Below, in pieces: positions 1,334 through 63,247 of a DNA stretch of 64,000 nt. The stretch's first letter is position 1; each line of letters opens with the position of its first letter. Under the pieces are notes generated by a model that had not been told where the DNA came from, made no database searches, and saw only the letters and a list, made by a program, of their open reading frames with translations. A program made the translations under genes and the position numbers. This stretch comes from Podarcis erhardii (lineage: Eukaryota): assembly GCA_964252035.1 (NCBI GenBank), contig OZ176213.1, one strand, 5' to 3'.

Positions 1334-4300
1334 AATTCCCCGTATGAAGCGCCAGCCGCCAAAGGAGGATCCCTATGCTGTGCTCATGACTCCGGTAGAA
1401 AAAGAGTGGGTGATAAAGGTGCAAATGTTGCAGCTTCAGAGTGACAACCTTCACAGGGATGACTATTATTACCAGGTAAGTGTTGTTGTTTAGTCATATC
1501 CGACTCTTTGTGACCCCCTGGACCAGAGCACGCCAGGCATTCCTGTCTTCCACTGCCTCCCGCAGTTTGGTCAAACTCATGTTAGCAGCTTTGAGAACAC
1601 TGTCCCACCATCTCGTCCTCTGTCATCCCCTTCTCCTTGTGCCCTCCATCTTTCCCAACATCAGGGTCTTTTCCAGGGAGTCTTCTCTTCTCACGACGTG
1701 GCCAAAGTATTGGAGTCTCAGCTTCAGGATCTGTCCTTCCAGTGAGCACTCAGGGCTGATTTCCTTCAGAATGGAGAGGTTTGATCTTCTTGCAGTCCAT
1801 GGGACTCTCAAGAGTCTCCTCCAGCACCAGAATTCAAAAGCATCAATTCTTTGGGGATCAGCCTTTTATATGGTCCAGCTCTCACTTCCATACATCGCTA
1901 CTGGGAAAACCATCGCTTTAACTATACAGAGCTTTGTTCACACTTTTCCGTTCCAGCCAAGTAATGTTTATGATACATATGCCTATATAACATGTGCAGT
2001 AAAAATTCACATATTACTGGAAATATTATACAGAAATGCTTTGTACTGGGGGAAATCTACTTTGTGAAGAATACATATATTGGATGTAATTGCATACAAG
2101 GGAGTATATTGGGATAAATTAGCACTACAATGCTGGACCTCCCTCCCTGAAGAAGGCAGACTAGCTCCTGACTTGTCCTTCCATGGACAGGTAAAGACCT
2201 CCTTGTTCCAATGTGCTTTGGGGAACCGGCTGCTTTTAATGAAAAGGGTGGTGCCATGCTGTTTTTATTGTAATTATTTGTAGGTTTTAAACAGATTTCA
2301 TATATGTATTGAGTTTGAATTCTATTGGGGTTTTTAAAATTAATTTTTCTATGTTTTTAGTGCTTTTATTTCGAGACTTTGAGTCCCATTAGGGAAAATG
2401 TTGGGGTATAAATGACAATAATTAATAATGATGATGCTGATGCTGATGAACTGTTTTTAGGATATCAGAATGTGGAGAACTGAACTTAAGAAGCAAAAAA
2501 TGAGAAACTGCCACTGATAGGTTCACCCACCCCTAAGCAAGAATACTAAACCGCTCTTGAGAGGGTGGGCATAGCCTTCCAGTCACAAGGCTTGGGTCTG
2601 GGTCAGTTCTGTCTCTTGCAACTGCAGACCTGCTCTCATATGATGGGCTGCATTCTGACAACCATATTCTCCACCCCATGGTGGAGCTCCTTCCCTTGGG
2701 CTCTGTTAGGTTCGCCCAGGAAACGGAGAACTATAGTTCAAAAGGCACACATTAATCACTGTCTGTCGAGAATGGCTCAGTGAGAATTGCCGTCTTGACA
2801 GTTTTGGATGCTGGAGTTGGGGTGAGTGGGGAGCAACAGAAGTGTTGTGTGCTTCCATTGCTTTTGGTACTGAGCTGTCCTGTCCTCCCCACCCCCCAGG
2901 AATATTATCGCAAGCTGGAGCGCAAACAGGCAGAGAAGGGGCTTCTTGGAGGGTGCAAGACTGAAGTCCCCAAGCTAGTGACACCGTATATCCAGAAAGT
3001 GGAGGCATACGAATCTGGTAAGCGCTCTGCAGAAAAGAGGCTCTTCCCTAGATGTTAGAGATGCTAGGCACCTCCTGACAATCGTTTCCTCCTTCTAGTG
3101 GTGCGGATACCGGGCTCCCTGGGCCAAGTGGCAGTGTCTACGTGCTACAGTCCCCGCAGGGCTATTGATGCCGTGCACAACATCCCACTGGAACAGGTAA
3201 TGCACCTGTCCTGTTGCCTCTGGCTTGCCAGAAGCTGGGACTCGACTCCACCGATTTGCTGCATGTGAACCTGAAGTCTCTTCCATATATATCATCAGTG
3301 GGACCTTCCAACCCATGGGCCTTGTCTCGCCAGGCCATTTGGGCTAACCATGCCTGATTTCCTGGGCCTTGGAGTCCCATGAATGCTGGGCATGGGGAAG
3401 TTTGAGGAAAGTTCTTCATTTGCAGTTGTCACCAGAATTCAAGTTGGGTTGCAAAGGAAGAATCTTCTCTGCAGCTGCTGCTAGAACCGCCTGACACGTG
3501 ACACAAGATGATTTATGGTTGGGCGGCCCTGTTCACCTGTCAGTGGTCCACAGCGGATGGTTGTTCCCCACCCCCTAATAAGTAGGGCATGTTATTAACT
3601 GGCGGGTGGACGGTATATTCTATCGGCTTTTTCCTCCTGTTTTTCACACCACTTCTAATTGACCAGTGGAATTCTGGCCGCCTTGTTGTATTCCGTAAAC
3701 GGAAACGGCCCCACTGGAAACTGTATTGCAGAGCCCCCTGAACTGTTAATGTAGCATCCAGGGATGCCAAGCTGGTGCTGGTTGCTCTGCTGTTGAAAAC
3801 TAACACATGTTCCCCCTCCCTTTTTTTATCCATCTTCTGAAGGCTGTGGGTAATCAGCGACTGCAAGTGCTATATGAAATTGAGAAGGTGAGTCACTGAG
3901 ATAGCTTTGGAAGGCAGTTCTGTGTTTGTTTGGTTTTTAAGCCAGTGTCCTTGGAGTGCGGCAAGGCCAGTACCAGAAGCATTATTGTTGATTAACTCTT
4001 GTTTGGCTTTGTATTTATGTATTTAAACATTGATTTGGGGGGGGGGGGTGTTTGGTAATACAGTGGTACCTTGGTTCCCGAACGGCTTAGTTGTCGAACA
4101 AATCGGCTCCCGAATGCCACAAACCCGGAAGTAAGTGTTCTGGTTTGCGAACGTTTTTTGTTTTTTTGTTTTTTTAAATAATATTTATTCAAATTTTAAA
4201 GATTACAAAGAGAAAATTAGAAAAAAACAAAAAATAAAAATAAAAAAGTACAAAAAATACAATACAAAAATACAAACAAATCGAAAAAAGAAAAAAGAGA

Positions 4301-7300
4301 AGAAAAAACAGCTCAAACTTTTACATAACTTTCTTTCCTTTGCTTATTTCCTTGACCTCCTCACACCTCCCTTTTTTGTATTCTGGTTCAATTAGATATT
4401 TCAGCAAATCCTTTCTAGCTTTGTTTTTATCCTAATAATTTATATTAATATACTGTAATTTTACATTCTCGTCTTCCTCCAATTAAAAAATCAATTTTTA
4501 CCTAATCCTTTATATCATTTCTGCTAAAACCACATGGTTTGCGAACGTTTTTTGGAAGCCGAATGTCCAACGTGGCTTCAGCGGCTTCCATTTGAATGCA
4601 GGTATCTCCTGCAGCCAATCAGACGCCCCGCCTTGGTTTTCAAATGGTTTCAGGAGTTGAACGGACTCCCGGAACGGATTAAGTTCAAGAATTGTATTGA
4701 TATATTCTGCATTTGTTGAATTGTTTATTTTTGTCATTCGAATTTACTAACATGTTCTGTATTTTGTATGTTTGTATTTTCAATGTTTTGATGCATTTGA
4801 ATGTTTGCTGCAAGCTGCTTTGGGTACAGCTTATTGTGCAAAAGCAGCATATTAGTAAACTCCATCAGTCTCTATTCAGAAAGGCAGTGTGTGCTCTTCT
4901 TCCTCCAGTCACATACCCACCCCCTTTGTCCCCACAACAAAGAGCTTGACAATATGAAACTCAGGATCATGGCATTCCAGTGGAGCAGATTCCTAGTGTG
5001 GTGTATCCAACACAGGCAATGTCATGACTACAGATGATGATGATGATGCCTAGAAACTCTTGCAGAGTTGTTAGCAAATAGCTCTGATCAGCTAGAACTC
5101 TGCACATGCCTCCAGAACTGAGTGCTTTGGCTGAGTTAATGAAATAGTCATAGAATATGAGAAAAGCCCCTACAGTGTGAACCAGTCACAAGTACAGTGG
5201 TACCTCTGGTTACGAACTTAATTCGTTCCGGAGGTCCGTTCTTAACCTGAAACCCGAGGTACCACTTTAGCTAATGGCATAGCTGTCAACTTTCAGATTT
5301 GAAAAATAAGGGATCAGCAGCCTCGAAAATAAGGGATCAGCAGCCTCACCTGTCCCGGGGACAGTCTACGGGATATCTAACAATCCGGGATAGCAGCGGG
5401 AAACGGTGCTGGAATAAGGGAATTTCCCGCAAAAAAGGGAAGGTTGACAGCTATGGCTAATGGGGCTTCCCGCTGCCGCCGCATCGCCACCGCACAATTT
5501 CCTTTCTTATCCTGGGGCAAGTTCTTAACCCGGTACTACTACTGGGTTAGCGGAGTCTGTAACCCGAAGTGTTTGTAACCCGAGGTGTTTGTAACCCGAG
5601 ATACCACTGTGGTAGATTGCAATTGCCTAATTGATGGGAGTTGTAATCCAGCCACATCAGTTTGCAGGTTGCTGGACAAAACTGCTACCTGCCCCCTAGT
5701 GACCCTGCCAAAAGATTTTACATTGCAAAAGTAAAAACTAACTAAAGCATAATTCCTTGGCGCGGGGTGTACATGTACATGCCTGTGGTGCCTGAGCATG
5801 TGATCCTTAATGCTAGCACCAAATTAAGGGTTTGAACACTGTTTGGAGAATAGTTGATTCATGCTCCTGAACTTGTGGCTTTGTGACACTGCTGGCCCTA
5901 AACAAGTTTAGGAGACTCCGTGGAAAATGGAGGCATGGATTTCTCTACAGTTCCGATGAACTCTAGGTAAGAAAATACCATCTGCTGCCTTCCCTTTGCC
6001 CCCCCCAAAAAAATTGGCAGATGGGAGATAACAGGGGAAACAGCAACCACCTAGAGAGCACAGCTAGACGCTCAGCAAATATACCGTATTTTTCGCTCTA
6101 TAAGACGCACTTTTTCCCTCCTAAAAAGAAAGGGAAAATGTGAGTGCGTCCTATGGAGCGAATGCAGGCTGCGCGGCTAAGCCAGAAGCCAGAACAGGGA
6201 GAGGGAGTGCTGTGCAGCGCTCTGTCTCGCTGTTCTAGCTTCAGGGTTAGCGGCGCAAAGCCTTCACAGGGCAGCGGGGTGCCTTCATCCTGCTGCCCTC
6301 CGGAGGCTTCATGGACTGTCCCAGAAGCCTCCGCAGGGCACGGGGATGAAGGCTCCTGCGGAGGCTTCATGCAAAGCTAGACCAGCTAGAGGGAGCACTG
6401 CGCAGCCCTCCCTCTAGCTATTCTGGCTTTTGGATGACCCTGCGAAGCTATCCCAGCTATCCCAGCGGCTATCCCAGAAGCCAGAACAGCAAGAGGCGAT
6501 CCCAGAAGCCAGATCCCTCTTGCTGTTCTGGCTTCTGGGATTCAGATTTTTTTTTTTCTTGTTTCCTCCCCCCCAAACTAGGTGTGTCCTATTGTCTGGT
6601 GCGTCCTATAGAGCAAAAAATACGGTAGTTGGCTAAAGAGCTGCCCTGTCAAAGACGGTGGTTTTATGGATCTTGTTGGTGTGTTCCTGAAACAGATGTA
6701 CCTGCAGCTGCTGGATATAGAAGATGGTCAGCGGAAACTGGAGCAGGTGCCAGAGGAGGAGCACCTCCACTTCTGTGAGAAATTTGCGCGTGAGCTGGGA
6801 CATATCTATCAAGCCCTAAGAATCGGAGAGCAGAATTCGGAAAAGTGAGTCCAGGGGGAATATTTGCGGCAGTGATGGTACATGAGATGGGTGTTAGGAT
6901 GAAGAAGATGATGATTATTCTGGCCACGTGTCTGTGGACCCACCTCTATCCATCAGGCCAGCTGCCTACTTAGGTTATCAGGCCGCTGGCAATTTCTACT
7001 GGTTCATACCATCCTCCCTCTCTAGCGGAAGAGCCAGGAGATGTATAGGGCTGTATAAAGATCTGCTGGAAGAATACTCAACACAGATAAGCAAAGAACT
7101 TGAGCCAATCAAAAATTTTCTCTTGGAATGTTTGGGCCTGCTTACTTCCCTGACTGAGCTAATTAGGAGAAAAGAAGGCTGCCGTCCCCATAAAGCAGTC
7201 GACAACAAGCCAAATGGAAATATAATCCAGTCAGGCACGAAAAACAGAAAAACAACTAGAACTAAACCAGGCCAGGTGGAAAAACCACTTGCCCCCAAGA

Positions 7301-10240: not shown

Positions 10241-12063
10241 AATAAAAATGGGAGGCAGGGTAGTAGCTAATGCCTGGGTGGCCAGAAACCTGTGTAAGCT
10301 TCATGTTTTGCAAATATAATTGTGGAACGGTTCCTTGTAGTTGGTAAAATTGGATAAAAGGAGATTGGAGAGAGCTCTTCACTGGGGCTGCCACAGAATA
10401 GCTGAAGCCTTGCAGCAGGCATAGCCAAAGTGGTGTCCTCTCAATGTTTTGTACTACAACTCCTCTAATCTCTTGACCATTAGCTACACTGGCTGGGGCT
10501 GATGAGAGATGTGTTGCAAAACAATATGCAGAGCACTACATTGGCTAACCCTGCTTTATAGAACGCAGTTGGCCACTGATGGGAACTAATTTTCCCCTTT
10601 GATTCCTGATTTGCTTTCCTTTATGTTTCAGGTGATTGGTTTCTGCCTTCATGAGCTTTCGCAACACTTAGAGCCTCCTTTGTTGCTGCAGCGTGATCTT
10701 CGGTGGTAGTATCAGTCTTCGAGAGGCCTGGCTGTAGCTAGAACACAGTGGTTGTTTAAAGAAAACGATTATTTAATTCACAAATTCTGCTTTTGTTTGT
10801 GGTATGACGTGGTTCCCCCCCCCCCAAGTGCTCTGTGCTAATTGTAGATATTCAGTGCTAGCTCAGCACATAAACTGAGCCTGAAATGAGTGAACACAGG
10901 CTTGCCTGTACAGTAAATACTAGGTTGTGGGGGATGAACTTTGATTTTTACAATATCTTGTGTACAGCACTTATACAATAAAAGCAAATAAAACTAGTTT
11001 GAAATATTGGATCTTGCAGGTGAGGGGGCGCATAGTTGCCCTAAGAAAGATTGTGCATCTTTTCTTTGTTAATATTTAACTTTTCCTACAGATGTGGGTG
11101 AGACCTTTGAAGGCGGTGGAACTCCTGCCACTGCCTTGAACAGGATGCTAATTGTATCACTTGAAGTTCCATGTTTCATTTTTTTTCCAGTCTTTTCATT
11201 AGGACTGTGCGTGGGTTAACCATTTCCTCCCCCATTGTAGTCCCTATTAAATTGCCTCTACGCTGCTATGAAGGCCAGTGGCAGCTTTCACCTGGGACTA
11301 TCATAGTGCGGGAGGAAAGGTTCAACCTTCTTGCAGTCCCCTCCACCTTTTTTTCTTTTAATAAAAATGAAAATGCAATTTCCCCTTCTTTTCTGCTCCT
11401 TTTTTCTCCCGACCCCCGTCCTGGCCTGTTAATAGTAGAAGAGAGAGAAGACATTTAATTTCAAGGGCTGTGTTTTTCAGTATTGTATGTAAGTTGGTCC
11501 TTTATATTACATGAACTGCAAGCACTGGGAGAGATCTGGCTTGATGCTACATCAGAATGAGTTGTTGATCTTCAGAGATTGTTAGTGTCTGTAACTGGAG
11601 CTAGATGACCACTCTTTTTCAGAATAGAAAGGGCTTGCTGCTTTCAAATGTACAAACACACCCAATTTTTATCTCTGTTAAACAGACTTTTTTCCAAAAA
11701 GTACAGACACTTGTGTGCTGCTGTCTGGTTCTGGTATATNNNNNNNNNNNNNNNNNNNNNNNNNNNNNNNNNNNNNNNNNNNNNNNNNNNNNNNNNNNNN
11801 NNNNNNNNNNNNNNNNNNNNNNNNNNNNNNNNNNNNNNNNNNNNNNNNNNNNNNNNNNNNNNNNNNNNNNNNNNNNNNNNNNNNNNNNNNNNNNTTTGGA
11901 ACACTGCTTTATGTTGTTGCAATTATTAATATGCTATGCCAGATGCTGTAGGATATTTCAGTGTATTTTTAATGCTGCTGTTATTTATTACATATTTCAT
12001 TTCATTGTTTTGCAAATAGAACTGCAGTACAGTTAGAATATACAAAATAAAAGCAGCAATAAA
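10241..12063 (+). terminator. Candidate PATL2 poly(A) signals
   Basis: AATAAA at 10241-10246, 10977-10982 + 10987-10992, and 12046-12051 + 12058-12063. Which are used cannot be seen from DNA. Confidence 0.5.
11740..11894. other. Assembly gap (155 N)
   Basis: Run of N. Confidence 1.
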
Positions 12064-14689: not shown

Positions 14690-15480
14690 CCTACGTGACG
14701 GAAGAGGCAGGATCTGTTGCCCCTGAGTGTCTTGACATTGCCTCAAGCGAGCCGTGTAGTAGGCCGCCTTGCGCTCCTTGGAAAAGCAAGGCGGAGCCAG
14801 CTGCCCAGCCCCAAGCATGCGCCTACTCGGGAGTAAGCCCCCCGCTCAATCCCACGGAAGCCAAGCGAGGTGAGACCAGGCGTGGGCGAGGAGGATGCCA
14901 AGAGGCCACGCCCTGCTCCTCGCTCCCCGCGCTCCGATTGGCTGCCCACCTCCGTCCCCCTCTCCTCCTCCCTCCTCCCTCTTTCCCAGGGGCGGCTCCG
15001 GCTCCGCCCCTTTTTCCCCTCTCCGAGGCCCCGCCCCCTCTCCGTCCTGGCGCCGCCGCGGGCTCCCCTCTCCCCATAAGCCGCCTGTTGCCGCTTCCGG
15101 CGGGGCTGTGCGGGAGCCGGAAGTGGCCTCCGCGGGTGGCGGCGGCGGCGGCGGCGACATGGCGTCGGGAGGCTCCCCTGTGGACCGGCTGCCTCCGCCT
15201 TTCCCCGCGGCGGAGCCTGCGGGCGTCCCGGAGGCGGGCAGCGACTCGGACGGGGAGGACATTTTCACCGGCAGCTCCGTGAGTGGCTTCCTCGGGGCGG
15301 GGGGGGGGAGGCGCCCTGCTGGGACCCGCGCCCTGTCAGTCGTCGCCCTCCTTCCCCTCAGCGCCGCCTTGAGAAGTTTCTGCGGACTTGGCCAAGGGCG
15401 AGGAGGGGCCACGGCCGGTCCGGTGCTGCCGTGCATCGTCTCGCTCGAAGCGGAGCCTTGCAGGGTTCAGTGGGGCTTTG
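14690..15480 (+). promoter_or_regulatory. SNX1: SNX1 CpG-island promoter, TATA-less
   Basis: GC- and CpG-rich tract around exon 1. Inverted CCAAT (ATTGG 14937-14941), GC boxes near 14990-15040, ETS sites GCTTCCGG (~15093) and CCGGAAGT (15117-15124), YY1-like GACATGGCG over the start codon, (GGC)6 at 15138-15155. Confidence 0.8.
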
Positions 15481-18400
15481 CTACCCCGGAAATTGTGTGT
15501 GTGTGGAGCAGAAAATATTAAGAATAAATTTAAGGAACCGCAGAAAGAGGGAGGGGGAGGGAGTCAAGTTTCGAAAGGTTAAAATGACTGTAAACTCATT
15601 GAAATGCGTAAAACTGANNNNNNNNNNNNNNNNNNNNNNNNNNNNNNNNNNNNNNNNNNNNNNNNNNNNNNNNNNNNNNNNNNNNNNNNNNNNNNNNNNN
15701 NNNNNNNNNNNNNNNNNNNNNNNNNNNNNNNNNNNNNNNNNNNNNNNNNNNNNNNNNNNNNNNNNNNNNNNNNNNNNNNNNNNNNNNNNNNNNNNNNNNN
15801 NNNNNNNNNNNNNNNNNNNNNNNNNNTGGCAGTGCAAGCTTTCGGAAACGGGCTGCAAACTGCCCACTTCTTTAGTTTCCACGAAGTTGTTCAGCAAAGG
15901 TGTGGGTGTATCTTTCCGTGCATGCGAGTGGGAAGGTGCGGTTGGTCTGCTTGTGTTGTTTTCGTCGTGCATTTTGTGTTGTGCTTCTGTGTTGTAAGGC
16001 GCCCTGTGACCTTCCAGTGAAAGATGGTGTACGAATTCCATAAAGAATCATGCATGTGGGGCTGGAAAGGCTAAATGGCGAATATCTTACCCATTTCCCC
16101 TCCCCTTTCCTGTATAGGCACCTGCCTTCCGAGGGTAGCCCATTTATGCAGTCTTCCTGTACTCTGTTACTTGAAGATGTGTTGTGATAAACCTGGTGGC
16201 ATTTAAAGTGCCACAAGGTTCTTTATTGGTTTTCCTGCAATAGAGTGGGCATGGCTTCCTCTCAGAATGCTGCAGATTGATTGATTGATTGTAAGGATAT
16301 GGTGATGGGAAATCAAATCTTGGGCTTATGTTTTGAATCTGTTGCATGGTGGAGGCTTGGAAGCAGTTTAAATCTAGAACATAAAATCATCTTTGCCCCC
16401 TCTTTTGGATGGCTGGAGGTCCCACTGGTGTTGACTGTTTGATCAAAGTTCTAGACTTGGGTTGAGTTCAGGTCTAGGTTTCAATTCAACCGCCCTGAGC
16501 CTGGGGAGGGCGGGGTATAAATAAATTATTATTATTATTATTATTAATTCCCAGTTTTGTCCATTGCATTAAAGCAGCAGCCTAATATGTTACCTCTCTG
16601 TAGCTACTTAATCTATTATATTTTCTCTGTTTCACAGCCTTTCTTTGCTAATAAGACTTCATAGGAGGCTCTCTAAATCCCATGCTGCATAAGTGCATAT
16701 ATTTTGTATTCTTCCTAAGAGTTGCTGCTACTGCTTGTCTTAAAATGAATTTTGTTTACTTTGAGGCTTGTTTTATGTTACACTTCTGCTGGAATACTAG
16801 GTCATACACCTGAATAGTCTTTAAACACTCGTCTGTCACTTTTGCATCCTGAGTCAGTGGTATGTTTTCCACTGAACAGTTATCCTCTCCATTAGTCTGA
16901 AAGGACTTGAATTTACTTTATGTTTAATTGCTCAAAAGGAGGATAACTTTAATCTACTGATTCACATTCTTACTGTTGCTGATAATGACAATTTTTACCT
17001 GTTCTTATCAACAACATCCTGAAAAGCCTTTCTTACTGCATGCAAAAAACTGTGCCCATGTTCATTCAACCATCCTTTGACCAGTCCTGGGGATGTTCAT
17101 CGTGTGATGGAATATAATTGATGTGATGGGGAAAGTTTGGTGCATTTAAGTTTTTAGCAAAATTGTCCTATCCTGATTCCTTTTTTAGAAGTTTAGAACT
17201 TAAGTTAATGTGAAGGTAACTTCTAAACTGCAAACAGGGCATAGAATTCTGCTTGAGGAGCCCCTTTTTTGCAGTGGATGTCCTATCTTATCTAGATGCA
17301 GCTAATTGGCCAAGAGTCATAGTTAGTCAATGTTTACCAGGTCTTATGTTTCCAGAAAGAAATGTTTCTTTCAGGTAACAGTCTGTGGGATAAACTGCAA
17401 AACCTAAAAAGTGAATGGTTTTGAGATACCCACATAAAAGGAGATGAACTTGAAATTCAGATTCCTGGTAAGGGGATGAGGAAGAACTCTGTGGCACCAA
17501 TTGACTGGAAAGAATCAGTAAGCATGATGCCGGAAGTTGCTCAATCTCTGTAGAAATCATGCAAAACTTGCAAAACTTCACCAAAATGACTAGAGCTGTT
17601 GGAAAGGCTAGCTTTACTCTGCTCAGTATTGGTAACTTTCTAAGAATTCTCCATGGATAATAGTATATCTACAGTGGTGCCTCGCAAGACGAAAAGAATC
17701 CATTCCGCGAGTCTCTTCGTCTAGCGGTTTTTTCGTCTTGCGAAGCAAGCCCATTGACGGCTTAGCGGATTAGCGCTATTAGCGGTTTAGCAGCTTTTAG
17801 CGGATAAGCGGCTTAGCGGCTTAGAAAAAGGGGGGGAAGGGGGGGAAAACCGCAGGAACTCGCAAGACATTTTCATCTTGCGAAGCAAGCCCATAGGAAA
17901 TTCGTTTTGCGAAGCACCTCCAAAACGGAAAACTCTTTCGTCTAGCGAGTTTTCCGTCTTGCGAGGCATTCGTCTTGGGTTGCACCACTGTACTTCTGAT
18001 CTAATTCCCCGCCCCCTACAGTACCATATTTCTAGCTCTTACTGATACAGAAATGCAAGTACCAAAGCAGAAGAATGGACTAAGGCTCACAACACTGTAT
18101 TTTGGGGAACAATACAGCCTTATTTAACTGTAGGGCCACATGTTGCCATGAGCTGTGCCTTTTCATACAGAATAAAAGAGTGCAGAAACTTGCAGCCTCA
18201 AACTTCCAATCAAGTTTCTGCAACTTAGAACTTCAGGGAGCACAGAAAACATAAGAGCTTCCTTCTGAAGCAGTATGGCTCTGGCAGAGCTGCAGGGGGC
18301 TGAAGCCTTCCAAGGATTTGTTTGTCGTCAGCAAGCCTTGCTCCTGCAGCTCATTGCTCTGGCAACAAAGAGTCTGACTTCTAGCCTCAACAGCTCTGTC

Positions 18401-21400
18401 CATGGTGCCTCTTGGGGTCTGTGACCCCGTTCATGCTGCTATTTTATTTATTTATTTTGAAATTAGCAACTCAGCCGTGCAAACAGTGTCAGTGCTGTCT
18501 CCAGATACCAGAGCATTGTGTCTTCAGAAAGCTGTTGGGAAACAGTGGGCCTTTATAAGCCAGCACTACAATGACAGAATAGTGTAAAATGCACCAATGT
18601 ATGCATTATTAATTCCGCCCCAAAGAAGCTTTTTTTGACTTTTATTCTTGATAGCTGCTGAGAAGAAACATACTCAATGTACTGAAATAGGAAGGTTTTT
18701 TTTAAAAAAGTAAGGGTTTGAAAAACATTGGGTTTGCAAAATAACTTTACCTTTGGTAAAGTTGGCAGAGTTTTGTGAAACCGGTGGCATCCATGTGGCT
18801 GAAGGCATGCAATATATTTTTTTCAGGCTTCTGTGGGCATATACTTCAATAACAGATTTAACTTTGTAACATGTATAATAACTGTTATCTGTTCTTATTA
18901 GAGCAAGCCAATGTCGCCTAAGAAAGAGTCGCCTGTACCAGTAAGAACTACCTCCACAGAAAATGGTGTTCAGGAGGAACAGGATGATCAGGACCTATTC
19001 GCAGGTATGTCTTCTTACCAGGTGTGATGGTGTAAGTTCTTAAGAAAGCATGCACTGCTGTGGATTCTCCAGTTGCACAGGAGAAGACGTGCTTTGTGTT
19101 AAGGTGTTACAAAGTTGCTAGAAACAAACACCTTGACTTTGCAAGCAAGCCTGTCTGCTGATATTCTTCTGCTAAAACCCACGCACCACTTACAGCAGTC
19201 TTTTGCTGTTAACCCTTTGGCAGAAATGGGGCTTTAGATCTCTCCTATAGAAAATCTCTGGACATGAGCTCAAAAGTTGTGCTGTAGTGGCACTGCAGAT
19301 CAAGAAATCTCCAGTTTTAATTTTGCTTTCACCACAAGCTCAAAGTAGGTGATCTCAGCCTCCGTGCCCTCATCTGCAACATGGGGTGGGTGGGAAGTAA
19401 TAATACAGAGTTATTTTACATGGTTGTAAGACTTACAGCACAGCGCACGTGAACATTTGTATGACCATTTATATGAACACTAAGTAGATAATATTAGATG
19501 GTGATAATATTAGACACGTAAATCTGAGCCAAGGAGGATCATTGGAGATTTAAAACCAGGTAGAGGTATTTAACTAGCTGAAAGCTAGTTGGAACAAATG
19601 TATGGTATTTCTAATTCTGGTAATTCTATATGTTCAAATTAGGACAGTTTTGTGATAATTGCATGTTCTCCAAGGAGTGCTTATGCCCAGGCTAGTAGCC
19701 GCTCTGTGTTTAGGTTAATTAAAGGAAGTGAAATTAGCAGGCCCTCAAGTCTTTGTACTAAACTATACTTGAAACATGAAAGCTCCCAAACAGGAAACCC
19801 AACCACCTCATCTGTCATACGTGTGCCTAGATATGTCCCTAGGTCCAGACCACAATTTACATGTGTTCCTCTTCTTTTTAAACTGACAACTGGCCATTTG
19901 TTTTCAGATAGTTTGGGAACTGATGGGACCTGTTTGCTAACAAGATGAAGTTTATGCAAAATGAAGCTTATTCTTGTTTTGGTATTTTGAAAAGGTCAAT
20001 AAAATAAGGAGAAGAAAACAAAGTTTATAATAACCTAAATGACAGCTTTCAGGTGGCTTCTCAGTGCAGTCCTGACCTCTACTGCTGAAGGCTGCATACT
20101 TCTAGATGACCGTTGTTTGGACCTGCAGGAGGGGAAATTGCTGTTGTGCTCAGGTCCTGCTTGCAGTCTTCCTTGGGGCACTGTGAAAACAGGATACTGA
20201 ACTAAATGGACCATTGGCCTGATCCAGGGGGCTATTATGTTCTTATGGTATGCAGTATGACTTAGGCAATTATTTCACTATAAATCCATCCAGAAAGAGC
20301 AGGAATTGGTGTTGTGGCCTAGTACAAAGAAGGAGTGCAGCAGCGTTATAGTTGCATATTTATATTCCTTGATCAGATTTGATTGCCAAAGATTACGGCG
20401 AATCTCTAACTTGAATGCCTGCCACACAGGCTGGAATTGGGGAGGATAATGTCTAGTAGCTCTTCCTGATACATTTCTTCTGGCCTAGAAAAACTCAACA
20501 TCTTTCCTGATTCCTAAACCATTCCGGTTCTCTGCCCCCAGTTATAAATCTTATCCACTTTCAGATGCCACTGTAGAATTGTCTCTTGATAGCACACAAA
20601 ACAACCAGAAGAAAGAGATGGCTACTGTGATCAGCCCTGTCCCTTCTTTAGAGAAAACAGCAAATTTGCCTTCTAAGCCACAGTCAAAAACCTATGAGGA
20701 GGTAAGTGTTTCTGTGATTGTCTAGTCATATAAAGGTAAAGGTACCCCTGCCCGTACGGGCCAGTCGTGTCCGACTCTAGGGTTGTGCACCTATCTCACT
20801 TAAGAGACACTTCCGAGTCACGTGGCCAGCGTGACGAAGCTGCTCTGGCGAGCCAGCACCAGCGCAGCACACGGAAACGCCGTTTACCTTCCCGCTATAA
20901 AGCGGTACCTATTTATCTACTTGCACTTAAGGGTGCTTTCAAACTGCTAGGTGGGCAGGAGCTGGGACTGAAAGACGGGAGCTCACCCCGCTGCGGGGAT
21001 TCGAACCGCCGACCATGCGATCAACAAGCCCTAGGCACTGAGGTTTTACCCACAGCACCACCCGCATCCCTCCAAGATTCACCCTTCCCAGGTGAATATA
21101 CAATATATAACTGACTATATGTCTAGTCATATAGTCAGTTATATATTGTATATTCACCTGGGAAGGGTGAATCTTGGTGACTATTGTGAATAGCCTGCTA
21201 CATCCCTAAGCTAATTTCATACCCACATCTAACAGGTAATATTTAAAATACAGTGGTACCTCGGGTTAAGAACTTAATTCATTCTGGAGGTCTGTTCTTA
21301 ACCTGAAACTGTTCTTAACCTGAAGCACCACTTTAGCTAATGGGGCCTCCCACTGCTGCTGCGCTGCCGGAGCACGATTTCTGTTCTTATCCTGAAGCAA

Positions 21401-24400
21401 AGTTCTTAACCCGAGGTAATATTTCTGGGTTAGCGGAGTCTGTAACCTGAAGCGTATGCAACCTGAAGCGTATGTAACCCGAGGTACCACTGTACATATA
21501 TCCTGCCTTGCAACTTTAAAGCTTACAACATTTACTATTTTGTCAATTATATATAAATATTTGGGGGGGGGGAACCCTATTGAACCTGACAAATAGAAAA
21601 AAACTTACAAAAATGAGTTTTTTAGGAGACAATTTTTTAGGAAACAGTAGGTTCCATAGAAATGCTTTTGGAGAGGATACTTCAGAGCTGTGGTACTATG
21701 TTAGAAATTATGTTTTTATGTATTGAACATGAATGAGCTCTACATGCTGAAGCCTTCAGTCTACCCCCTAACTCTTTTAATATTCACACAATATTTAAAT
21801 ATGCACACAAATGTGAATATTATGTTGTGCCTGATACACGTCCTGACAGAAGTCCCTGGGTTAACCTACTTGAATGTACTTCTCTTACAGTTGGAAGAAG
21901 AGGAACAGGAAGACAAATTTGAACTTTCAGTGGAAGTGAGTGATCCTGAGAAAATTGGTGAGTCACTATGAAATGGAAATTACTTGACATAATTAAAGGG
22001 GAAAGCTGCATGGGTATGTGTTTTGCCTTCCGGTCTGAGGCAAGGCTGGTAATAAAGTTCTGCTTTCGGTGGTGGAGCTCAGAACTGCACTGATTGAACT
22101 GTCAACCCCCATCACTTACTGTTATGGATCAGCTTCAATACTTTGCTCTTGCTTCTTGCATAGAACGGCAGTGCAAGATTCTGCAAAAGCTTCTTGTTTA
22201 TGAAGTTTTTCCTGTTGCCAGAAATGTGATAGAAGAGTACTGTCAAGGGGAAAACTGATTACTGTGTTAACTTCCCACTCCCCTTCTGTGCCATTGTGGG
22301 TGATAGTTGGCTAGTAACAGCATAAATCACCTGGGTTTCTTAACTTATATATGTTCAAGTGTAATACAATAGATGCCCATTCTGAAGCTGGATGGTCTCA
22401 TATATTGTGTTCTTGACCATAAGCTTAAGGCAATTGTGTTCTGTTACTGCAGGTGCTGAAGTCATTGCTTTGAGCTTGTTTTCCAAGCAACAGATGATCC
22501 TTTTAAGTTATACTTTGTGTCTGTTGAGTAATTAATAACCTGAATATTTAGATTTTAATCTGATTCTATAGAGGCTTTTGACTGATGCACAGCTCTATAG
22601 AGGGGTGAAGCAGCAGTACAGCAGTTTGTTCAGCATCATCCCTCTCACTCCTGAATTTCTGTGGTGCTCTTTAAACTGCTCAACATTTTTAAAAGTCTTT
22701 GTGCTTTAAAAAGCAACTTGGGCCCTGAATACAAGAGCTTGCCTAAAACAATACCTGCACTTCAGCTACTCTTGTGCCCTGATTCCCAAAAATGCTACTT
22801 AAATGAGAGATAGCAGTTTGTTGGGAGCTGGTGTACAGGAACCTTAAAATTCAAATGTACACATGGAAGGTGTGCTGGCTTGCTCCTTCTTGCAGCTGTT
22901 GGCTGAATGCACACGACCGTTCTCCAAAGTCCTGACTTAATACAACCAGCTTCTAATTTGCAGGCATTCAAAGCATGCGCACCATTTCCACCTAGCAACA
23001 CCAGGAGTTGACTTCTTGGAGAGGAATATTTCAAGACCAGCTGAGATGCAGCTATTTTGCATAATAGATAATTTGGCACGTATCTTTTATTGCAGCTGCA
23101 CAGATCCTGCAGATTTTAATACAGGAAAGGATTCTGCAAAAAGAATTCTGTATCTATTTATGCTACTTGCTTTTAGACTTTCTATGCTCTGAAAAGCAAG
23201 CCGTGTGCAGTGAAGGGATTCTTTGGCCAGCATCCTGTGTGTGTTCTTTAAAAAAAAAAATGCCTTCAGTGCCATAACAGCCACTTAATTGTTCCGCCTG
23301 GGGCAGATGTGCAGAGCTCTCCCAGATCCTAGCAGTATAACAAGTCACTAATTATTATGTTAGGCTCATCTTTGTAGGAAGTAGAGACAGTACTTGGCAC
23401 CACTGAGGAGCCACTATTGTGTAAGCTTCAGCTGTCAGCATCCTGTAGCTTGTATGGTTGGAGAGCTGAAGGAGACCTCCTGGATCATCTGAACCACCTC
23501 CATACATGGGGGATGACTAGCAAGATGGAAAAATACTCAAGTGGGGCTTATTTATTCAGTGAAATGGGAAATGTTCAGAATGTATCATCTTTGACAGCTT
23601 AACTATTTTCTTCTTTGCTTGCTTGCCAGATCTAACACTCTGTTTTTAGTAAACTTTACTTACAGTATTACAAACTACCATGCTTTTCTAAAATCTTCAT
23701 TGCAAACTTGTTTCTGGAGTCTTCTATGGTTCACTGTTCCCCCCCCACACACACACACACACTCCACAACAAAATCAGCTGATGCACATATTATTCCAGC
23801 AGTAGCCTATTGAATTCCAAATGTTTTTGATATAGGAAACATGAGATGCAGCCCAGAATTCTGCATGCCTTTGTTATAACATCACATGGCTCAGCTTGTG
23901 ATTCACTCTGCTGCCCGGAAACTTCTCGGCCAGAGCTATTGCTTAACAATCTCACTTTTAAATTGATTCATTGTTTAGCGCAAACTTTTCACTTGCTGCC
24001 ATTTTTAGCTTCACATCCCTTTTTCTATACTTGCTAGTTTGGTAAGTTTACGTTCAGCTTCAGGTAAATTGTGTCACCTTGCTAGGCTGAAATATAGTTG
24101 CCCAGCCATTATGGAAGTGTGAGTTGTTGCAGGTAATGTAGAATTCAATATTGGAGGATTGTCTTCCTGACAGTTTTCTAAAAAGCAAAATTCTAGGGTT
24201 TCACCCAATAGAATAGCATAAGCCATTTGGGAGCTAAGCAGGACTTCTGGGAAGGTGGATACTGGTCTACACTGCCTATTACAGCTTTTTCCAACCCTGC
24301 CCCCCCCCAAAAAACAACCCTGATTCTTAATTTCTCGAGGTCACTTCATGCCTTGAAATGGTATGGAGTTCAGTATACTTCAAATGTGCTTTGAGCACAT

Positions 24401-54133: not shown

Positions 54134-62030
<7,897 letters not shown>

Positions 62031-62583
62031 CCGCCCCCTGCCCCTCTCGCTCGTCCTCCCCTCCCGCCTCCCCCGCGCGCAATGGTACAGCCCCGAGCCG
62101 GGCGGAGCGGAGTCCTGGGCGAGAGGGATTGGCCGCTTCCATCTCAGGAGAGGGGGAGGGAGGCCGTTCCCCACCCCCACCCCGGGGGGCGTCGGCGGCT
62201 CCTGCGACAAAGGAATGCCACGTTTCCAGCTTCCGATTGGGCGGCGAGCTCGGCCAATGGGAAGCGGGCACGAGAGGAGCCGGCGGCGGCGGCTGCGCGC
62301 CGGTTGGGCCAAGGGGCAGACAAAGGAGAGGAAGGACGCGCGGAGCGAGGACTACATTACCCAGCGAGCAGTGCGCGGCCGCCGGCGTCGCGCTCTTCGC
62401 TGAAGTTGCCGCCCTTCGCCTGTAGGGGGCAGTGCAACCATCTGCATAGGATGGAGGAGGGTGTTCTGTTTGTAGCCCTTTGGAAAAATGGTTGCGTGTT
62501 AAAGGATCAGACGTGTATAATTCCCATCCATAGCCAGATTTCCAGGGATCTGGCCCTGTTATGCTGCAGTCTTGTACACACTT

Positions 62584-63045
62584 TGTTGTTGTTGTTGTTT
62601 AGTCGTGTCCATCTCTTTGTGACCCCATGGACCAGAGCACACCAGGCACTCCTGTCTTCCACTGCCTCCCCCAGTTTGGTCAAACTCATGCTGGTAGCTT
62701 CGAGAACACTGTCCAACCATCTCGTCCTCTGCCGTCCCCTTCTCCTTGTGCCCTCCATCTTACCCAACATCAGGGTTTTTTCCAGGGAGTCTTCTCTTCT
62801 CATGAGGTGGCCAAAGTCTTGGAGCCTCAGCTTCAGGATCTGTCCTTCCAGTGAGCACTCAGGGCTGATTCCCTTCAGAATGGAGGTTTGATCTTCTTGC
62901 AGTCCATGGGACTCTGAAGAGTCTCCTCCAGCACCAGAATTCAAAAGCATCAATTCTTCGGCAATCCGCCTTCTTTCTGGTCCAGTTCTCACTTCCATAC
63001 ATCACTACTGGGAAAACCATAACTTTAACTATACGGACCTTTGTT
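62584..63045 (-). mobile_element. RTE/Bov-B LINE, 5'-truncated
   Basis: TKVRIVKVMVFPVVMYGSENWT..FWCWRRL and [25 protein letters not shown]; TSD TTGTACACACTT at 62572-62583 and 63044-63055. Confidence 0.92.
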
Positions 63046-63247
63046 GTACACACTTACCTGCTGCTTAGTGTGGCGTACTGCTACACACACAATGTATTTG
63101 CTCAATTCGGTGCAAACGGAGAAGCATGGAGCTATTAGATGCAAACTGGGTTTATGACTTACTTTGGCTTAAGACACTTGGCACACGGAGAAAGCAAAGG
63201 TATTAAAAAGCAAAGCAAAACATCTCAAAGATCCAGCTTATAAAAGG

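What the first reader, a model, noticed from the sequence alone, without database searches (positions are those of the whole stretch)
20719..21177. SINE insertion carrying a perfect 50-bp inverted copy of its own flank (106-bp hairpin)
Seen: TSD1 TGTCTAGTCATATA (20719-20732), reversed Sauria SINE (20733-21070), about 50 extra bp, then TSD2 (21120-21133). Bases 21072-21121 are the exact reverse complement of 21128-21177, with a 6-nt spacer TCTAGT, so the extra DNA at the SINE 5' junction is an inverted copy of the genomic flank beyond TSD2. Inference: during target-primed reverse transcription by the Bov-B machinery, the RT switched from the SINE RNA 5' end onto target DNA, or the target strand folded back and primed itself. 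Zero mismatches imply a young event. The result is a strong cruciform/RNA hairpin 370-475 nt from the SNX1 exon 3 donor, with the TSD starting at intron position +18.
Basis: partly seen in the sequence, partly recalled or inferred. Interest (0 to 1): 0.7.

Follow-up and report, generated by a model that had tools for sequence, protein, structure and literature searches.

The report
SINE insertion with fold-back flank copy
When a lizard jumping gene (a Sauria SINE) inserted into an intron of the SNX1 gene, the cut DNA end probably folded back and copied 48 bases of itself, leaving a perfect 106-base hairpin; this is a clean natural example of a repair mishap already seen with human L1 and R2 elements, not a new mechanism.

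Summary

- **Anatomy.** A 14-bp target-site duplication (TSD; 20719-20732 = 21120-21133) encloses a full-length reversed Sauria SINE (20733-21070) and one filler base (21071). It also encloses 48-50 bp (21072-21121) that are the exact reverse complement of 21128-21177.
- **Not an assembly artefact.** Short-read contigs from other runs break exactly where a k=31 graph must break at this palindrome. One differently named organism carries it with a 3-bp deletion in the left arm. A third organism probably has it too.
- **Age.** Because several named organisms share it, it is not demonstrably young. Zero mismatches are expected over a 128-bp target even after several million years.
- **Best mechanism (about 0.65).** After both target strands were cut, the 14-nt 3' overhang of the reciprocal end snapped back on itself. 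It paired by 2 nt (CA:TG) across a 6-nt loop and was extended 48 nt. It then joined the finished cDNA. A step-by-step model of this reproduces the window sequence exactly.
- **Main rival (about 0.2).** The cDNA 3' end copied a target-derived template.
- **Novelty.** The same anatomy is described for human L1 (inverted duplication, 2-bp microhomology, small hairpin). It is also a 'snap-back' junction class for R2. I found no report for Bov-B or RTE elements.
- **Earlier notes.** The scan's notes hold no earlier case of this kind.
- **Function.** Any effect on SNX1 is untested.

The parts
20565..20701 (+). SNX1 exon 3 (coding, ends in phase 0). The donor GT is at 20702-20703.
   Evidence: Open frame [17 protein letters not shown]...TYEE between an AG acceptor and GTAAGT. 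Exon 1 and exon 2 lie upstream. PX and Vps5 exons lie downstream.
20719..20732 (.). TSD copy 1 (14 bp), next to the SINE 3' tail. This is the primary RT end, where the first-strand nick primed cDNA synthesis.
   Evidence: Identical to 21120-21133, with no extension on either side.
20733..21070 (-). Full-length Sauria-type SINE. It is antisense to SNX1 and ends in ACCTTTACCTT.
   Evidence: Aligns end to end with four other copies in the window. The tail matches the published (ACCTTT)n tail (PMC13295347). Contig depth shows a very high copy number.
21071..21071 (.). One filler base between the SINE 5' end and the inverted copy.
   Evidence: It belongs to neither the SINE consensus start nor the palindrome. 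The model needs exactly one extra base.
21072..21119 (.). Newly made DNA: a 48-nt inverted copy of 21130-21177. The identity runs 2 nt further, to 21121, through the CA:TG microhomology.
   Evidence: Exact reverse complement. Reproduced by the snap-back model with a 48-nt extension. Present in organism A with a 3-nt deletion at 21111.
21120..21133 (.). TSD copy 2. On the minus strand this was the 14-nt 3' overhang of the reciprocal end. It holds the 6-nt loop (21122-21127) and the 2-nt pairing sites (21120-21121 and 21128-21129).
21128..21177 (.). Right arm: the original DNA that served as template. It is made of the last 6 nt of the TSD plus 44 nt of downstream flank.
   Evidence: Continuous with the unique flank in contigs from three runs. 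Contig depth is at single-copy level.

Best explanation
This is a by-product of one target-primed reverse transcription event.

1. The Bov-B-type endonuclease nicked the plus strand after ...CATATA. That 3' end primed the SINE cDNA. This step is shown by the TSD and by the orientation of the SINE tail.
2. The second nick, 14 nt to the left on the minus strand, released a reciprocal end with the 3' overhang TATATGACTAGACA. This is shown by the TSD.
3. Normally that overhang would prime on the cDNA straight away. Here it folded back on itself instead. Its last two bases, CA, paired with the TG six bases upstream.
4. A polymerase then extended it 48 nt along its own strand, copying TATA and then 44 nt of flank. 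This step is inferred, and the polymerase is unknown. Candidates are the LINE RT and a host repair polymerase such as Pol theta.
5. The extended end was then joined to the 3' end of the full-length cDNA, with one untemplated base between them. The opposite strand was filled in.

The result is a perfect 50-bp-stem hairpin sequence in SNX1 intron 3. Several named organisms have inherited it, and it is most likely neutral.
For: - A constructive model using the steps above (2-nt microhomology, 6-nt loop, 48-nt extension, 1 filler base) rebuilds window 20600-21300 exactly.
- The inverted copy lies inside the TSD pair, between the SINE 5' end and the 5'-side TSD. It is therefore part of the insertion event.
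- The copy begins within the overhang and leaves the smallest practical loop. Intramolecular fold-back predicts this; a jump to a separate template does not.
- The copy includes TATA(TG) from beyond the first-strand nick. The nicked downstream plus strand cannot supply those bases.
- There is no microhomology at the outer end (21071/21178) to guide an internal landing of the cDNA.
- The same anatomy is reported for human L1: inverted duplication of reciprocal-end DNA, 2-bp microhomology and a small hairpin (bioRxiv 10.1101/2024.12.14.628481).
- The palindrome is real and inherited. Contig ends in X15 (21148-21268) and X1 (21081-21168, 85 nt, with a 3-nt deletion) match a k=31 simulation exactly. 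An empty allele predicts no break.
Against: - No empty allele was found. The pre-insertion state is inferred from the TSD alone.
- The product sequence cannot by itself exclude extension of the cDNA 3' end on an intact target-derived template, followed by a 2-nt microhomology join.
- The R2 literature attributes 'snap-back' junctions to the cDNA end.
- The polymerase is unknown.
- Fold-back needs 44 nt or more of the plus strand to be resected or displaced. That is assumed, not shown.
Confidence: 0.65

Rival explanations
1. The cDNA end was extended instead. After copying the SINE RNA to its 5' end and adding one base, the RT (or another polymerase) continued on a plus-polarity template from the same locus. 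That template could be the sister or homologous DNA strand, or nascent SNX1 pre-mRNA. Copying ran 50 nt from 21177 back to 21128. The new 3' TG then paired with the terminal CA of the reciprocal overhang to close the junction.
For: - It gives the same final sequence. The 2-nt TG:CA overlap fits an ordinary microhomology join.
- R2-mediated insertions show a 'snap-back' class in which the cDNA 3' end primes on the cDNA or, less often, on nearby target DNA (PMC11371274, PMC11331408).
- LINE RTs are known to jump templates.
Against: - The nicked downstream plus strand ends at 21134, so it cannot template TATA(TG). A second intact molecule is needed.
- Landing at 21177 is internal and has no microhomology.
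- This model does not predict that the copy should stop just 6 nt short of mirror symmetry. A small loop would be a coincidence, roughly 1 in 5-10.
Confidence: 0.2
2. A later replication error. The SINE inserted normally. Afterwards, an intra-strand template switch during replication or repair inserted an inverted copy of the flank.
For: - Short template-switch mutations that create or perfect hairpins are common in vertebrate genomes (own knowledge).
- Human long-read data show many small inverted duplications with 1-15 bp microhomology, unrelated to mobile elements (PMC12350158).
Against: - The 48 bp sit exactly between SINE base 1 (plus one filler) and the first base of TSD2, and nothing is lost. 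For an independent event that is a coincidence of about 1 in several hundred positions.
- No run showed the SINE without the arm.
Confidence: 0.07
3. An assembly artefact, or a palindrome or foldback transposon that was already at the target site.
For: Long-read assemblies can contain fold-back chimeras. Perfect hairpins are typical of MITEs.
Against: - Short-read contigs from independent runs and differently named organisms carry the palindrome signature, and one carries its own 3-bp deletion.
- Depth over the arms is at single-copy level, so it is not a repeat family.
- The left arm lies inside the TSD pair. That is impossible for a simple insertion next to an existing palindrome.
- Models in which a capped hairpin end is opened predict GACA followed by GTCAG or by TGTCT. 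The sequence shows TATAGTCAG instead.
Confidence: 0.03

Closest known systems
L1 insertions with inverted duplication of reciprocal-end genomic DNA (DSB-end remodelling; bioRxiv 10.1101/2024.12.14.628481, Fig. 4D-E)
   Same: An inverted copy of adjacent target DNA lies between the element 5' end and the reciprocal breakpoint. The TSD-like duplication is retained. There is 2-bp microhomology at the inversion junction and a small hairpin. The proposed cause is a self-annealed 3' end that primes synthesis.
   Different: Those cases are human L1, in induced cell clones and in a tumour, so they are somatic. This case is a Pol III SINE moved by an RTE-clade (Bov-B) LINE. It is germline and inherited by several named lizard organisms. 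It is small (48 nt) and still perfect.
'Snap-back' 5' junctions of R2-protein-mediated insertion (PRINT; PMC11371274, PMC11331408)
   Same: Reverse-complemented sequence from the cDNA or from nearby target DNA is fused at the element 5' junction, often after full-length cDNA synthesis.
   Different: Those authors attribute it to the cDNA 3' end, and the copied sequence is mostly cDNA rather than target DNA. R2 uses a restriction-like endonuclease at a fixed rDNA site. Here the copied DNA is target flank, and the anatomy points to the reciprocal end.
Twin priming (5' inversion of L1)
   Same: The reciprocal 3' overhang acts as a primer during the insertion, and part of the product ends up inverted.
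   Different: In twin priming the overhang primes on the element RNA, so element sequence is inverted. Here the SINE is colinear and full length, and the inverted piece is host flank.
Snap-back templated insertions of polymerase-theta-mediated end joining
   Same: A 3' end folds back on 1-4 nt of microhomology. It is extended, then joined, leaving an inverted templated insert (own knowledge; related activities are discussed in bioRxiv 10.1101/2022.03.14.484287).
   Different: Typical inserts are a few to about 30 nt at ordinary breaks. Here the insert is 48 nt at a retrotransposition intermediate, and no evidence identifies the polymerase.

Membership tests
Sauria SINE (Bov-B/RTE-mobilised lizard SINE) | 3' end made of (ACCTTT)n microsatellite-like repeats | tested here: met
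   The focal copy ends in ACCTTTACCTT, and the other copies in the window end alike. The feature is as stated in PMC13295347 and PMC6007223.
Sauria SINE (Bov-B/RTE-mobilised lizard SINE) | TSD whose first base, in SINE sense, is the T of a TA, about 10 nt downstream of a TTT stretch (the Tn-TA signature) | tested here: inconclusive
   In SINE sense the TSD reads TATATG..., so the T-of-TA part is met. There is no TTT about 10 nt upstream, only AT-rich sequence.
Sauria SINE (Bov-B/RTE-mobilised lizard SINE) | tRNA-derived head with Pol III boxes | tested here: inconclusive
   A box-B-like GGTTCGAATCC is visible in all copies. ARAGORN and Rfam report no tRNA.
Sauria SINE (Bov-B/RTE-mobilised lizard SINE) | 3' region shared with the Bov-B LINE | tested here: inconclusive
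   Only a 16-nt motif (AGAGTCGGACACGACT) matches, 14/16, in two stretches that look like Bov-B LINE fragments by eye (E = 0.23). Pfam did not confirm those stretches as LINE. Otherwise this rests on the literature.
Sauria SINE (Bov-B/RTE-mobilised lizard SINE) | High-copy dispersed family with TSDs | tested here: met
   Five further copies or fragments lie in the 64 kb, several with TSDs. Summed contig depth over the SINE is very large in all four runs.
TPRT insertion with fold-back inverted duplication of the reciprocal end | The inverted host DNA lies between the element 5' end and the 5'-side TSD, inside an intact TSD pair | tested here: met
TPRT insertion with fold-back inverted duplication of the reciprocal end | The copy is templated by the immediately adjacent reciprocal-end strand, with short microhomology and a small hairpin at the turn | tested here: met
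   2-nt CA:TG microhomology and a 6-nt loop. The model reproduces the sequence exactly.
TPRT insertion with fold-back inverted duplication of the reciprocal end | The empty allele has one arm only | not testable with these tools
   None of the four runs laid gave an empty allele. No lizard genome collection is searchable here.
Twin-priming insertion | The 5' part of the element itself is inverted | tested here: not met
   The SINE is colinear over its whole length with the other copies.
MITE / foldback transposon | Multi-copy family with its own TSD | tested here: not met
   Contig depth over 21099-21192 is at single-copy level in X1, X5 and X15. The arm is a copy of the local flank.
microRNA precursor | Reaches an Rfam family's gathering score | tested here: not met
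   Only generic hairpin matches at 20-66 bits against thresholds of 56-100, on both strands.

The most novel reading that the evidence does not exclude
The fold-back was made by the Bov-B LINE protein itself during second-strand priming, and it is a recurrent outcome of RTE-clade integration rather than a one-off repair accident. Lizard genomes hold very many Sauria SINE insertions. They would then carry a readable record, in loop sizes, microhomologies and copy lengths, of how the reciprocal end is handled in vivo in a LINE clade that has no cell-culture assay.
Probability: 0.12. Interest if true: 0.6.

Novelty: new member of a known kind. Interest (0 to 1): 0.36.

Why it matters
How the 5' junction and the second strand of non-LTR retrotransposon insertions are made is still the least understood step of the process. 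Natural junctions with templated extra DNA act as fossils of the intermediates.

This copy is unusually readable. It is a full-length element with an intact TSD, and the fold-back has an exact register. It extends to the RTE/Bov-B clade, and to the germline, an outcome so far described for L1 in cultured and tumour cells and for engineered R2.

It also shows that a perfect 106-bp palindrome 370 nt from a splice donor can persist across named organisms. One lineage has begun to erode it near the centre.

In itself it is a single, probably neutral event.

Tried and rejected
- **Hairpin-capped end opened off-centre (P-nucleotide type).** This predicts that the overhang is followed directly by GTCAG (unfilled end) or by TGTCT (filled end). 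The sequence shows TATAGTCAG, so it is rejected by direct reading.
- **RT copying the nicked downstream plus strand to its 5' end.** This cannot supply the 4-6 nt beyond the nick.
- **Pre-existing palindrome.** Incompatible with the left arm lying inside the TSD pair.
- **MITE.** Depth is at single-copy level.
- **tRNA detection in the SINE head.** ARAGORN and Rfam found nothing.
- **Rfam on the hairpin.** Only sub-threshold generic miRNA-like matches.
- **Pfam on two stretches that look like Bov-B ORF fragments.** No hit.
- **Pfam on exon 3 alone.** No hit. The gene was identified from its other exons.
- **Search for an empty allele.** None appeared among the four runs. Organism G (X12) had nothing laid over 20535-20675 or 21099-21192. 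The tool warns that such holes prove nothing.
- **Earlier scan notes.** A word search for a similar case returned nothing.
- The N runs (11740-11894 and 15618-15826) were left untouched.

Full report
**What is there.** Reading 20400-21500 and running the repeat finder confirm every coordinate in the finding.
- The 14-mer TGTCTAGTCATATA occurs at 20719-20732 and at 21120-21133. Neither copy extends by a single base.
- Between the two copies lies a reversed SINE.
- BLAST against the window finds five further copies or fragments of this SINE. An alignment with four of them shows that the family begins with GGGA(C/T)GCGGGTGG. In two of those copies this start directly abuts their own TSDs.
- In the focal copy that start is at 21070-21067, so the SINE (20733-21070) is full length and 21071 is a single filler base.
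- The SINE ends in ACCTTTACCTT. This is the (ACCTTT)n tail published for the Sauria SINE. In SINE sense the TSD starts with the T of a TA, as published (PMC13295347; PMC6007223). The upstream TTT part of that signature is absent.

**The palindrome.** 21072-21121 is the exact reverse complement of 21128-21177, with no outward extension.
- The centre reads TG-TCTAGT-CA. Because the CTAG core is self-complementary, the tool also reports 53-nt arms with one T:T mismatch.
- It is by far the longest perfect hairpin in the window. The next has a 26-nt stem, and twenty block shuffles gave at most 12 nt.
- Predicted fold energy is -91.6 kcal/mol as RNA and -56.3 kcal/mol as DNA, z about -18 to -19.
- Rfam gives only sub-threshold matches to assorted miRNA hairpin models on both strands. 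These reflect the shape and nothing else.

**Gene context.** The plus strand carries a sorting nexin of the SNX1/2 type.
- Exon 1 (MASGG...EDIFTG) lies in the CpG-rich ORF 14874-15518.
- Exon 2, near 18902-19013, hits the Sorting_nexin N-terminal domain at E = 5e-6, just under Pfam's cut-off on a 37-aa fragment.
- The focal exon is 20565-20701.
- PX and Vps5 exons follow at about 26.2 kb and 34.5 kb.
- A cyclophilin exon lies on the minus strand near 56 kb. This fits the SNX1-PPIB neighbourhood known from other vertebrates (own knowledge).
- The labels 'exon 3', TSD at intron +18, and palindrome at +371 to +476 are therefore correct.

**Is it real, and how old?** The stretch 20300-21700 is held by runs from seven studies and nine coded organisms. 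I laid Logan contigs from four of those runs on it. A perfect palindrome cannot be walked through by a k=31 de Bruijn graph, so I simulated where unique and arm-shared 31-mers should begin and end.
- **Window sequence.** The simulation predicts a flank unitig at 21148-21268 (121 nt). Run X15 (organism H) shows no differences from the window and is probably the source species. It has exactly that contig. It also has a contig at 20346-20755 that crosses TSD1 into the SINE tail.
- **Copy with 3 nt missing at 21111.** The simulation predicts a unique unitig at 21081-21168 (85 nt). Run X1 (organism A) has exactly that contig crossing the loop. It also has contig 20300-20755, which shows the SINE. 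Its flanks differ from the window by 5/456 on the left and 0/130 on the right.
- **Run X5 (organism E).** At about 4x depth, it has a contig that starts exactly at 21128, the inner boundary of the arm-shared words. This is moderate evidence that organism E carries the palindrome too.
- **Empty allele.** The simulation predicts no break at all, and no contig of that form was listed.
- **Run X12 (organism G).** Uninformative.
- **Copy number.** Depth over the arms is at single-copy level.

The palindrome is therefore not an assembly artefact and not a repeat family. It predates the split of at least two differently named organisms. There are only 100 arm sites plus 28 TSD sites. At about 0.5% change per lineage, roughly 0.6-0.7 substitutions are expected, so seeing none says little. 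The 'young event' inference is not supported. The 3-bp deletion in organism A lies about 10 nt from the centre. Centre-proximal asymmetric changes of this kind are known to stabilise palindromes (own knowledge; not tested here).

**Mechanism.** The orientation fixes the strands.
- The SINE tail abuts TSD1. The first nick was therefore on the plus strand after ...CATATA, and the cDNA grew rightwards.
- The second nick, 14 nt to the left on the minus strand, left a reciprocal end with the 3' overhang TATATGACTAGACA.
- On the minus strand, the bases that follow this overhang are TATAGTCAGTT..., ending ...CTTGG. These are the complement of the strand's own preceding 48 bases. Then come one A and the SINE.
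- This is what results if the terminal CA pairs with the TG six bases upstream and the end is extended 48 nt.
- A script that enumerates fold-back registers rebuilds window 20600-21300 exactly with 2-nt microhomology, a 6-nt loop, a 48-nt extension and one filler base.

Three details favour this model over extension of the cDNA end on target DNA:
- The copy includes TATA(TG) from beyond the first nick. The nicked downstream plus strand does not contain those bases.
- There is no microhomology at 21071/21178 to guide an internal landing.
- The turn has the smallest practical loop. Intramolecular fold-back predicts this, but it would be a coincidence for a jump to a separate molecule.

The rival stays possible if the template was an intact molecule of plus polarity, either the sister or homologous strand or nascent SNX1 pre-mRNA. 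I give it about 0.2. A later replication template switch would have to insert 48 bp exactly between SINE base 1 and TSD2, so I give it about 0.07. Models based on opening a capped hairpin predict a different junction sequence and are rejected.

**Comparison with what is known.**
- A 2024-2026 preprint on L1-induced rearrangements describes L1 insertions with an inverted duplication of genomic DNA on the reciprocal end. It reports 2-bp microhomology and a 'small hairpin', in an induced cell clone and in a tumour. [quoted passage not shown]
- Work on R2-protein-mediated insertion defines a 'snap-back' class of 5' junction. It consists of reverse-complemented cDNA or, less often, nearby rDNA (PMC11371274, PMC11331408).
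- The two papers devoted to Sauria SINE and Bov-B insertion signatures do not mention inverted junction copies at all.
- My literature searches found no such report for RTE-clade elements.

The present case is therefore a new member of a known kind. It is the first I could find for this clade, it is in the germline, and it is inherited.

**Earlier scan notes.** A separate note reports a twin-priming-like Sauria SINE elsewhere in this genome. If correct, it would also show the reciprocal overhang acting as a primer. I did not test that note.

**Function.** Nothing here tests function. The hairpin lies in the sense pre-mRNA of SNX1 and could in principle be edited or diced. Its persistence, and its erosion in one lineage, fit neutrality.

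**Limits.**
- Only the one read-laying run used contigs rather than raw reads.
- Organism names are coded, so the depth of the shared ancestry is unknown.
- No lizard genome collection was available for a rate estimate.

Noticed in passing
window 21249-21494: A 246-bp element with 20-bp perfect terminal inverted repeats (TACAGTGGTACCTCGGGTTA) and internal 16-19-nt direct repeats (GTTCTTAACCTGAAGC-like). Summed contig depth is extremely high in all four runs. Many contigs join 21494 back to 21248, meaning head-to-tail tandem copies exist elsewhere in those genomes. It looks like a very abundant MITE.
   Followed up: partly
window 21063-21072 joined to 21242-21249 (table 5): In all four runs, dozens of short contigs join the SINE 5' end directly to the start of the TIR element. 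This may be a composite repeat found elsewhere in the genome. The matching sides are only 21-29 nt, so it may also be spurious.
   Followed up: no
window 20733-20748: The antisense SINE tail places two donor-like motifs (AAG|GTAAAG and AAG|GTACCC) 34-40 nt downstream of the authentic exon 3 donor. Read-through from the exon meets an in-frame TAG at 20723-20725, inside TSD1, so use of either motif would truncate the protein. The authentic donor GAG|GTAAGT is much stronger.
   Followed up: no
window 63595-63247 (-) and 51966-51618 (-): Two other Sauria SINE copies have short A-rich fillers (AA, AAG) between their 5'-side TSD and the SINE start. The focal copy has a single A. That makes 3 of 5 copies with 1-3 nt fillers, possibly untemplated additions to the cDNA end.
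   Followed up: partly
window 6471-6541: The second longest perfect hairpin in the window: 26-nt arms and a 19-nt loop, lying in a region of repeated ORF-like sequence.
   Followed up: no
window ~1480-2064 (-) and ~62510-63135 (-): The translated ORFs resemble the C-terminal and 3' region of Bov-B LINEs by eye. Both carry a 16-nt motif shared with the SINE 3' region (14/16). Pfam gave no hit.
   Followed up: partly
window 55989-56279 (-): A cyclophilin-type isomerase exon (Pfam Pro_isomerase, E = 1e-20) lies downstream of the sorting nexin gene on the opposite strand. This is consistent with a PPIB neighbour.
   Followed up: partly
window 20535-20675 and 21099-21192 in run X12: No contigs of organism G were laid over the exon or the palindrome at 90% likeness, although its flanks were covered. 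This could be divergence, a deletion, or the tool's silent filter.
   Followed up: no
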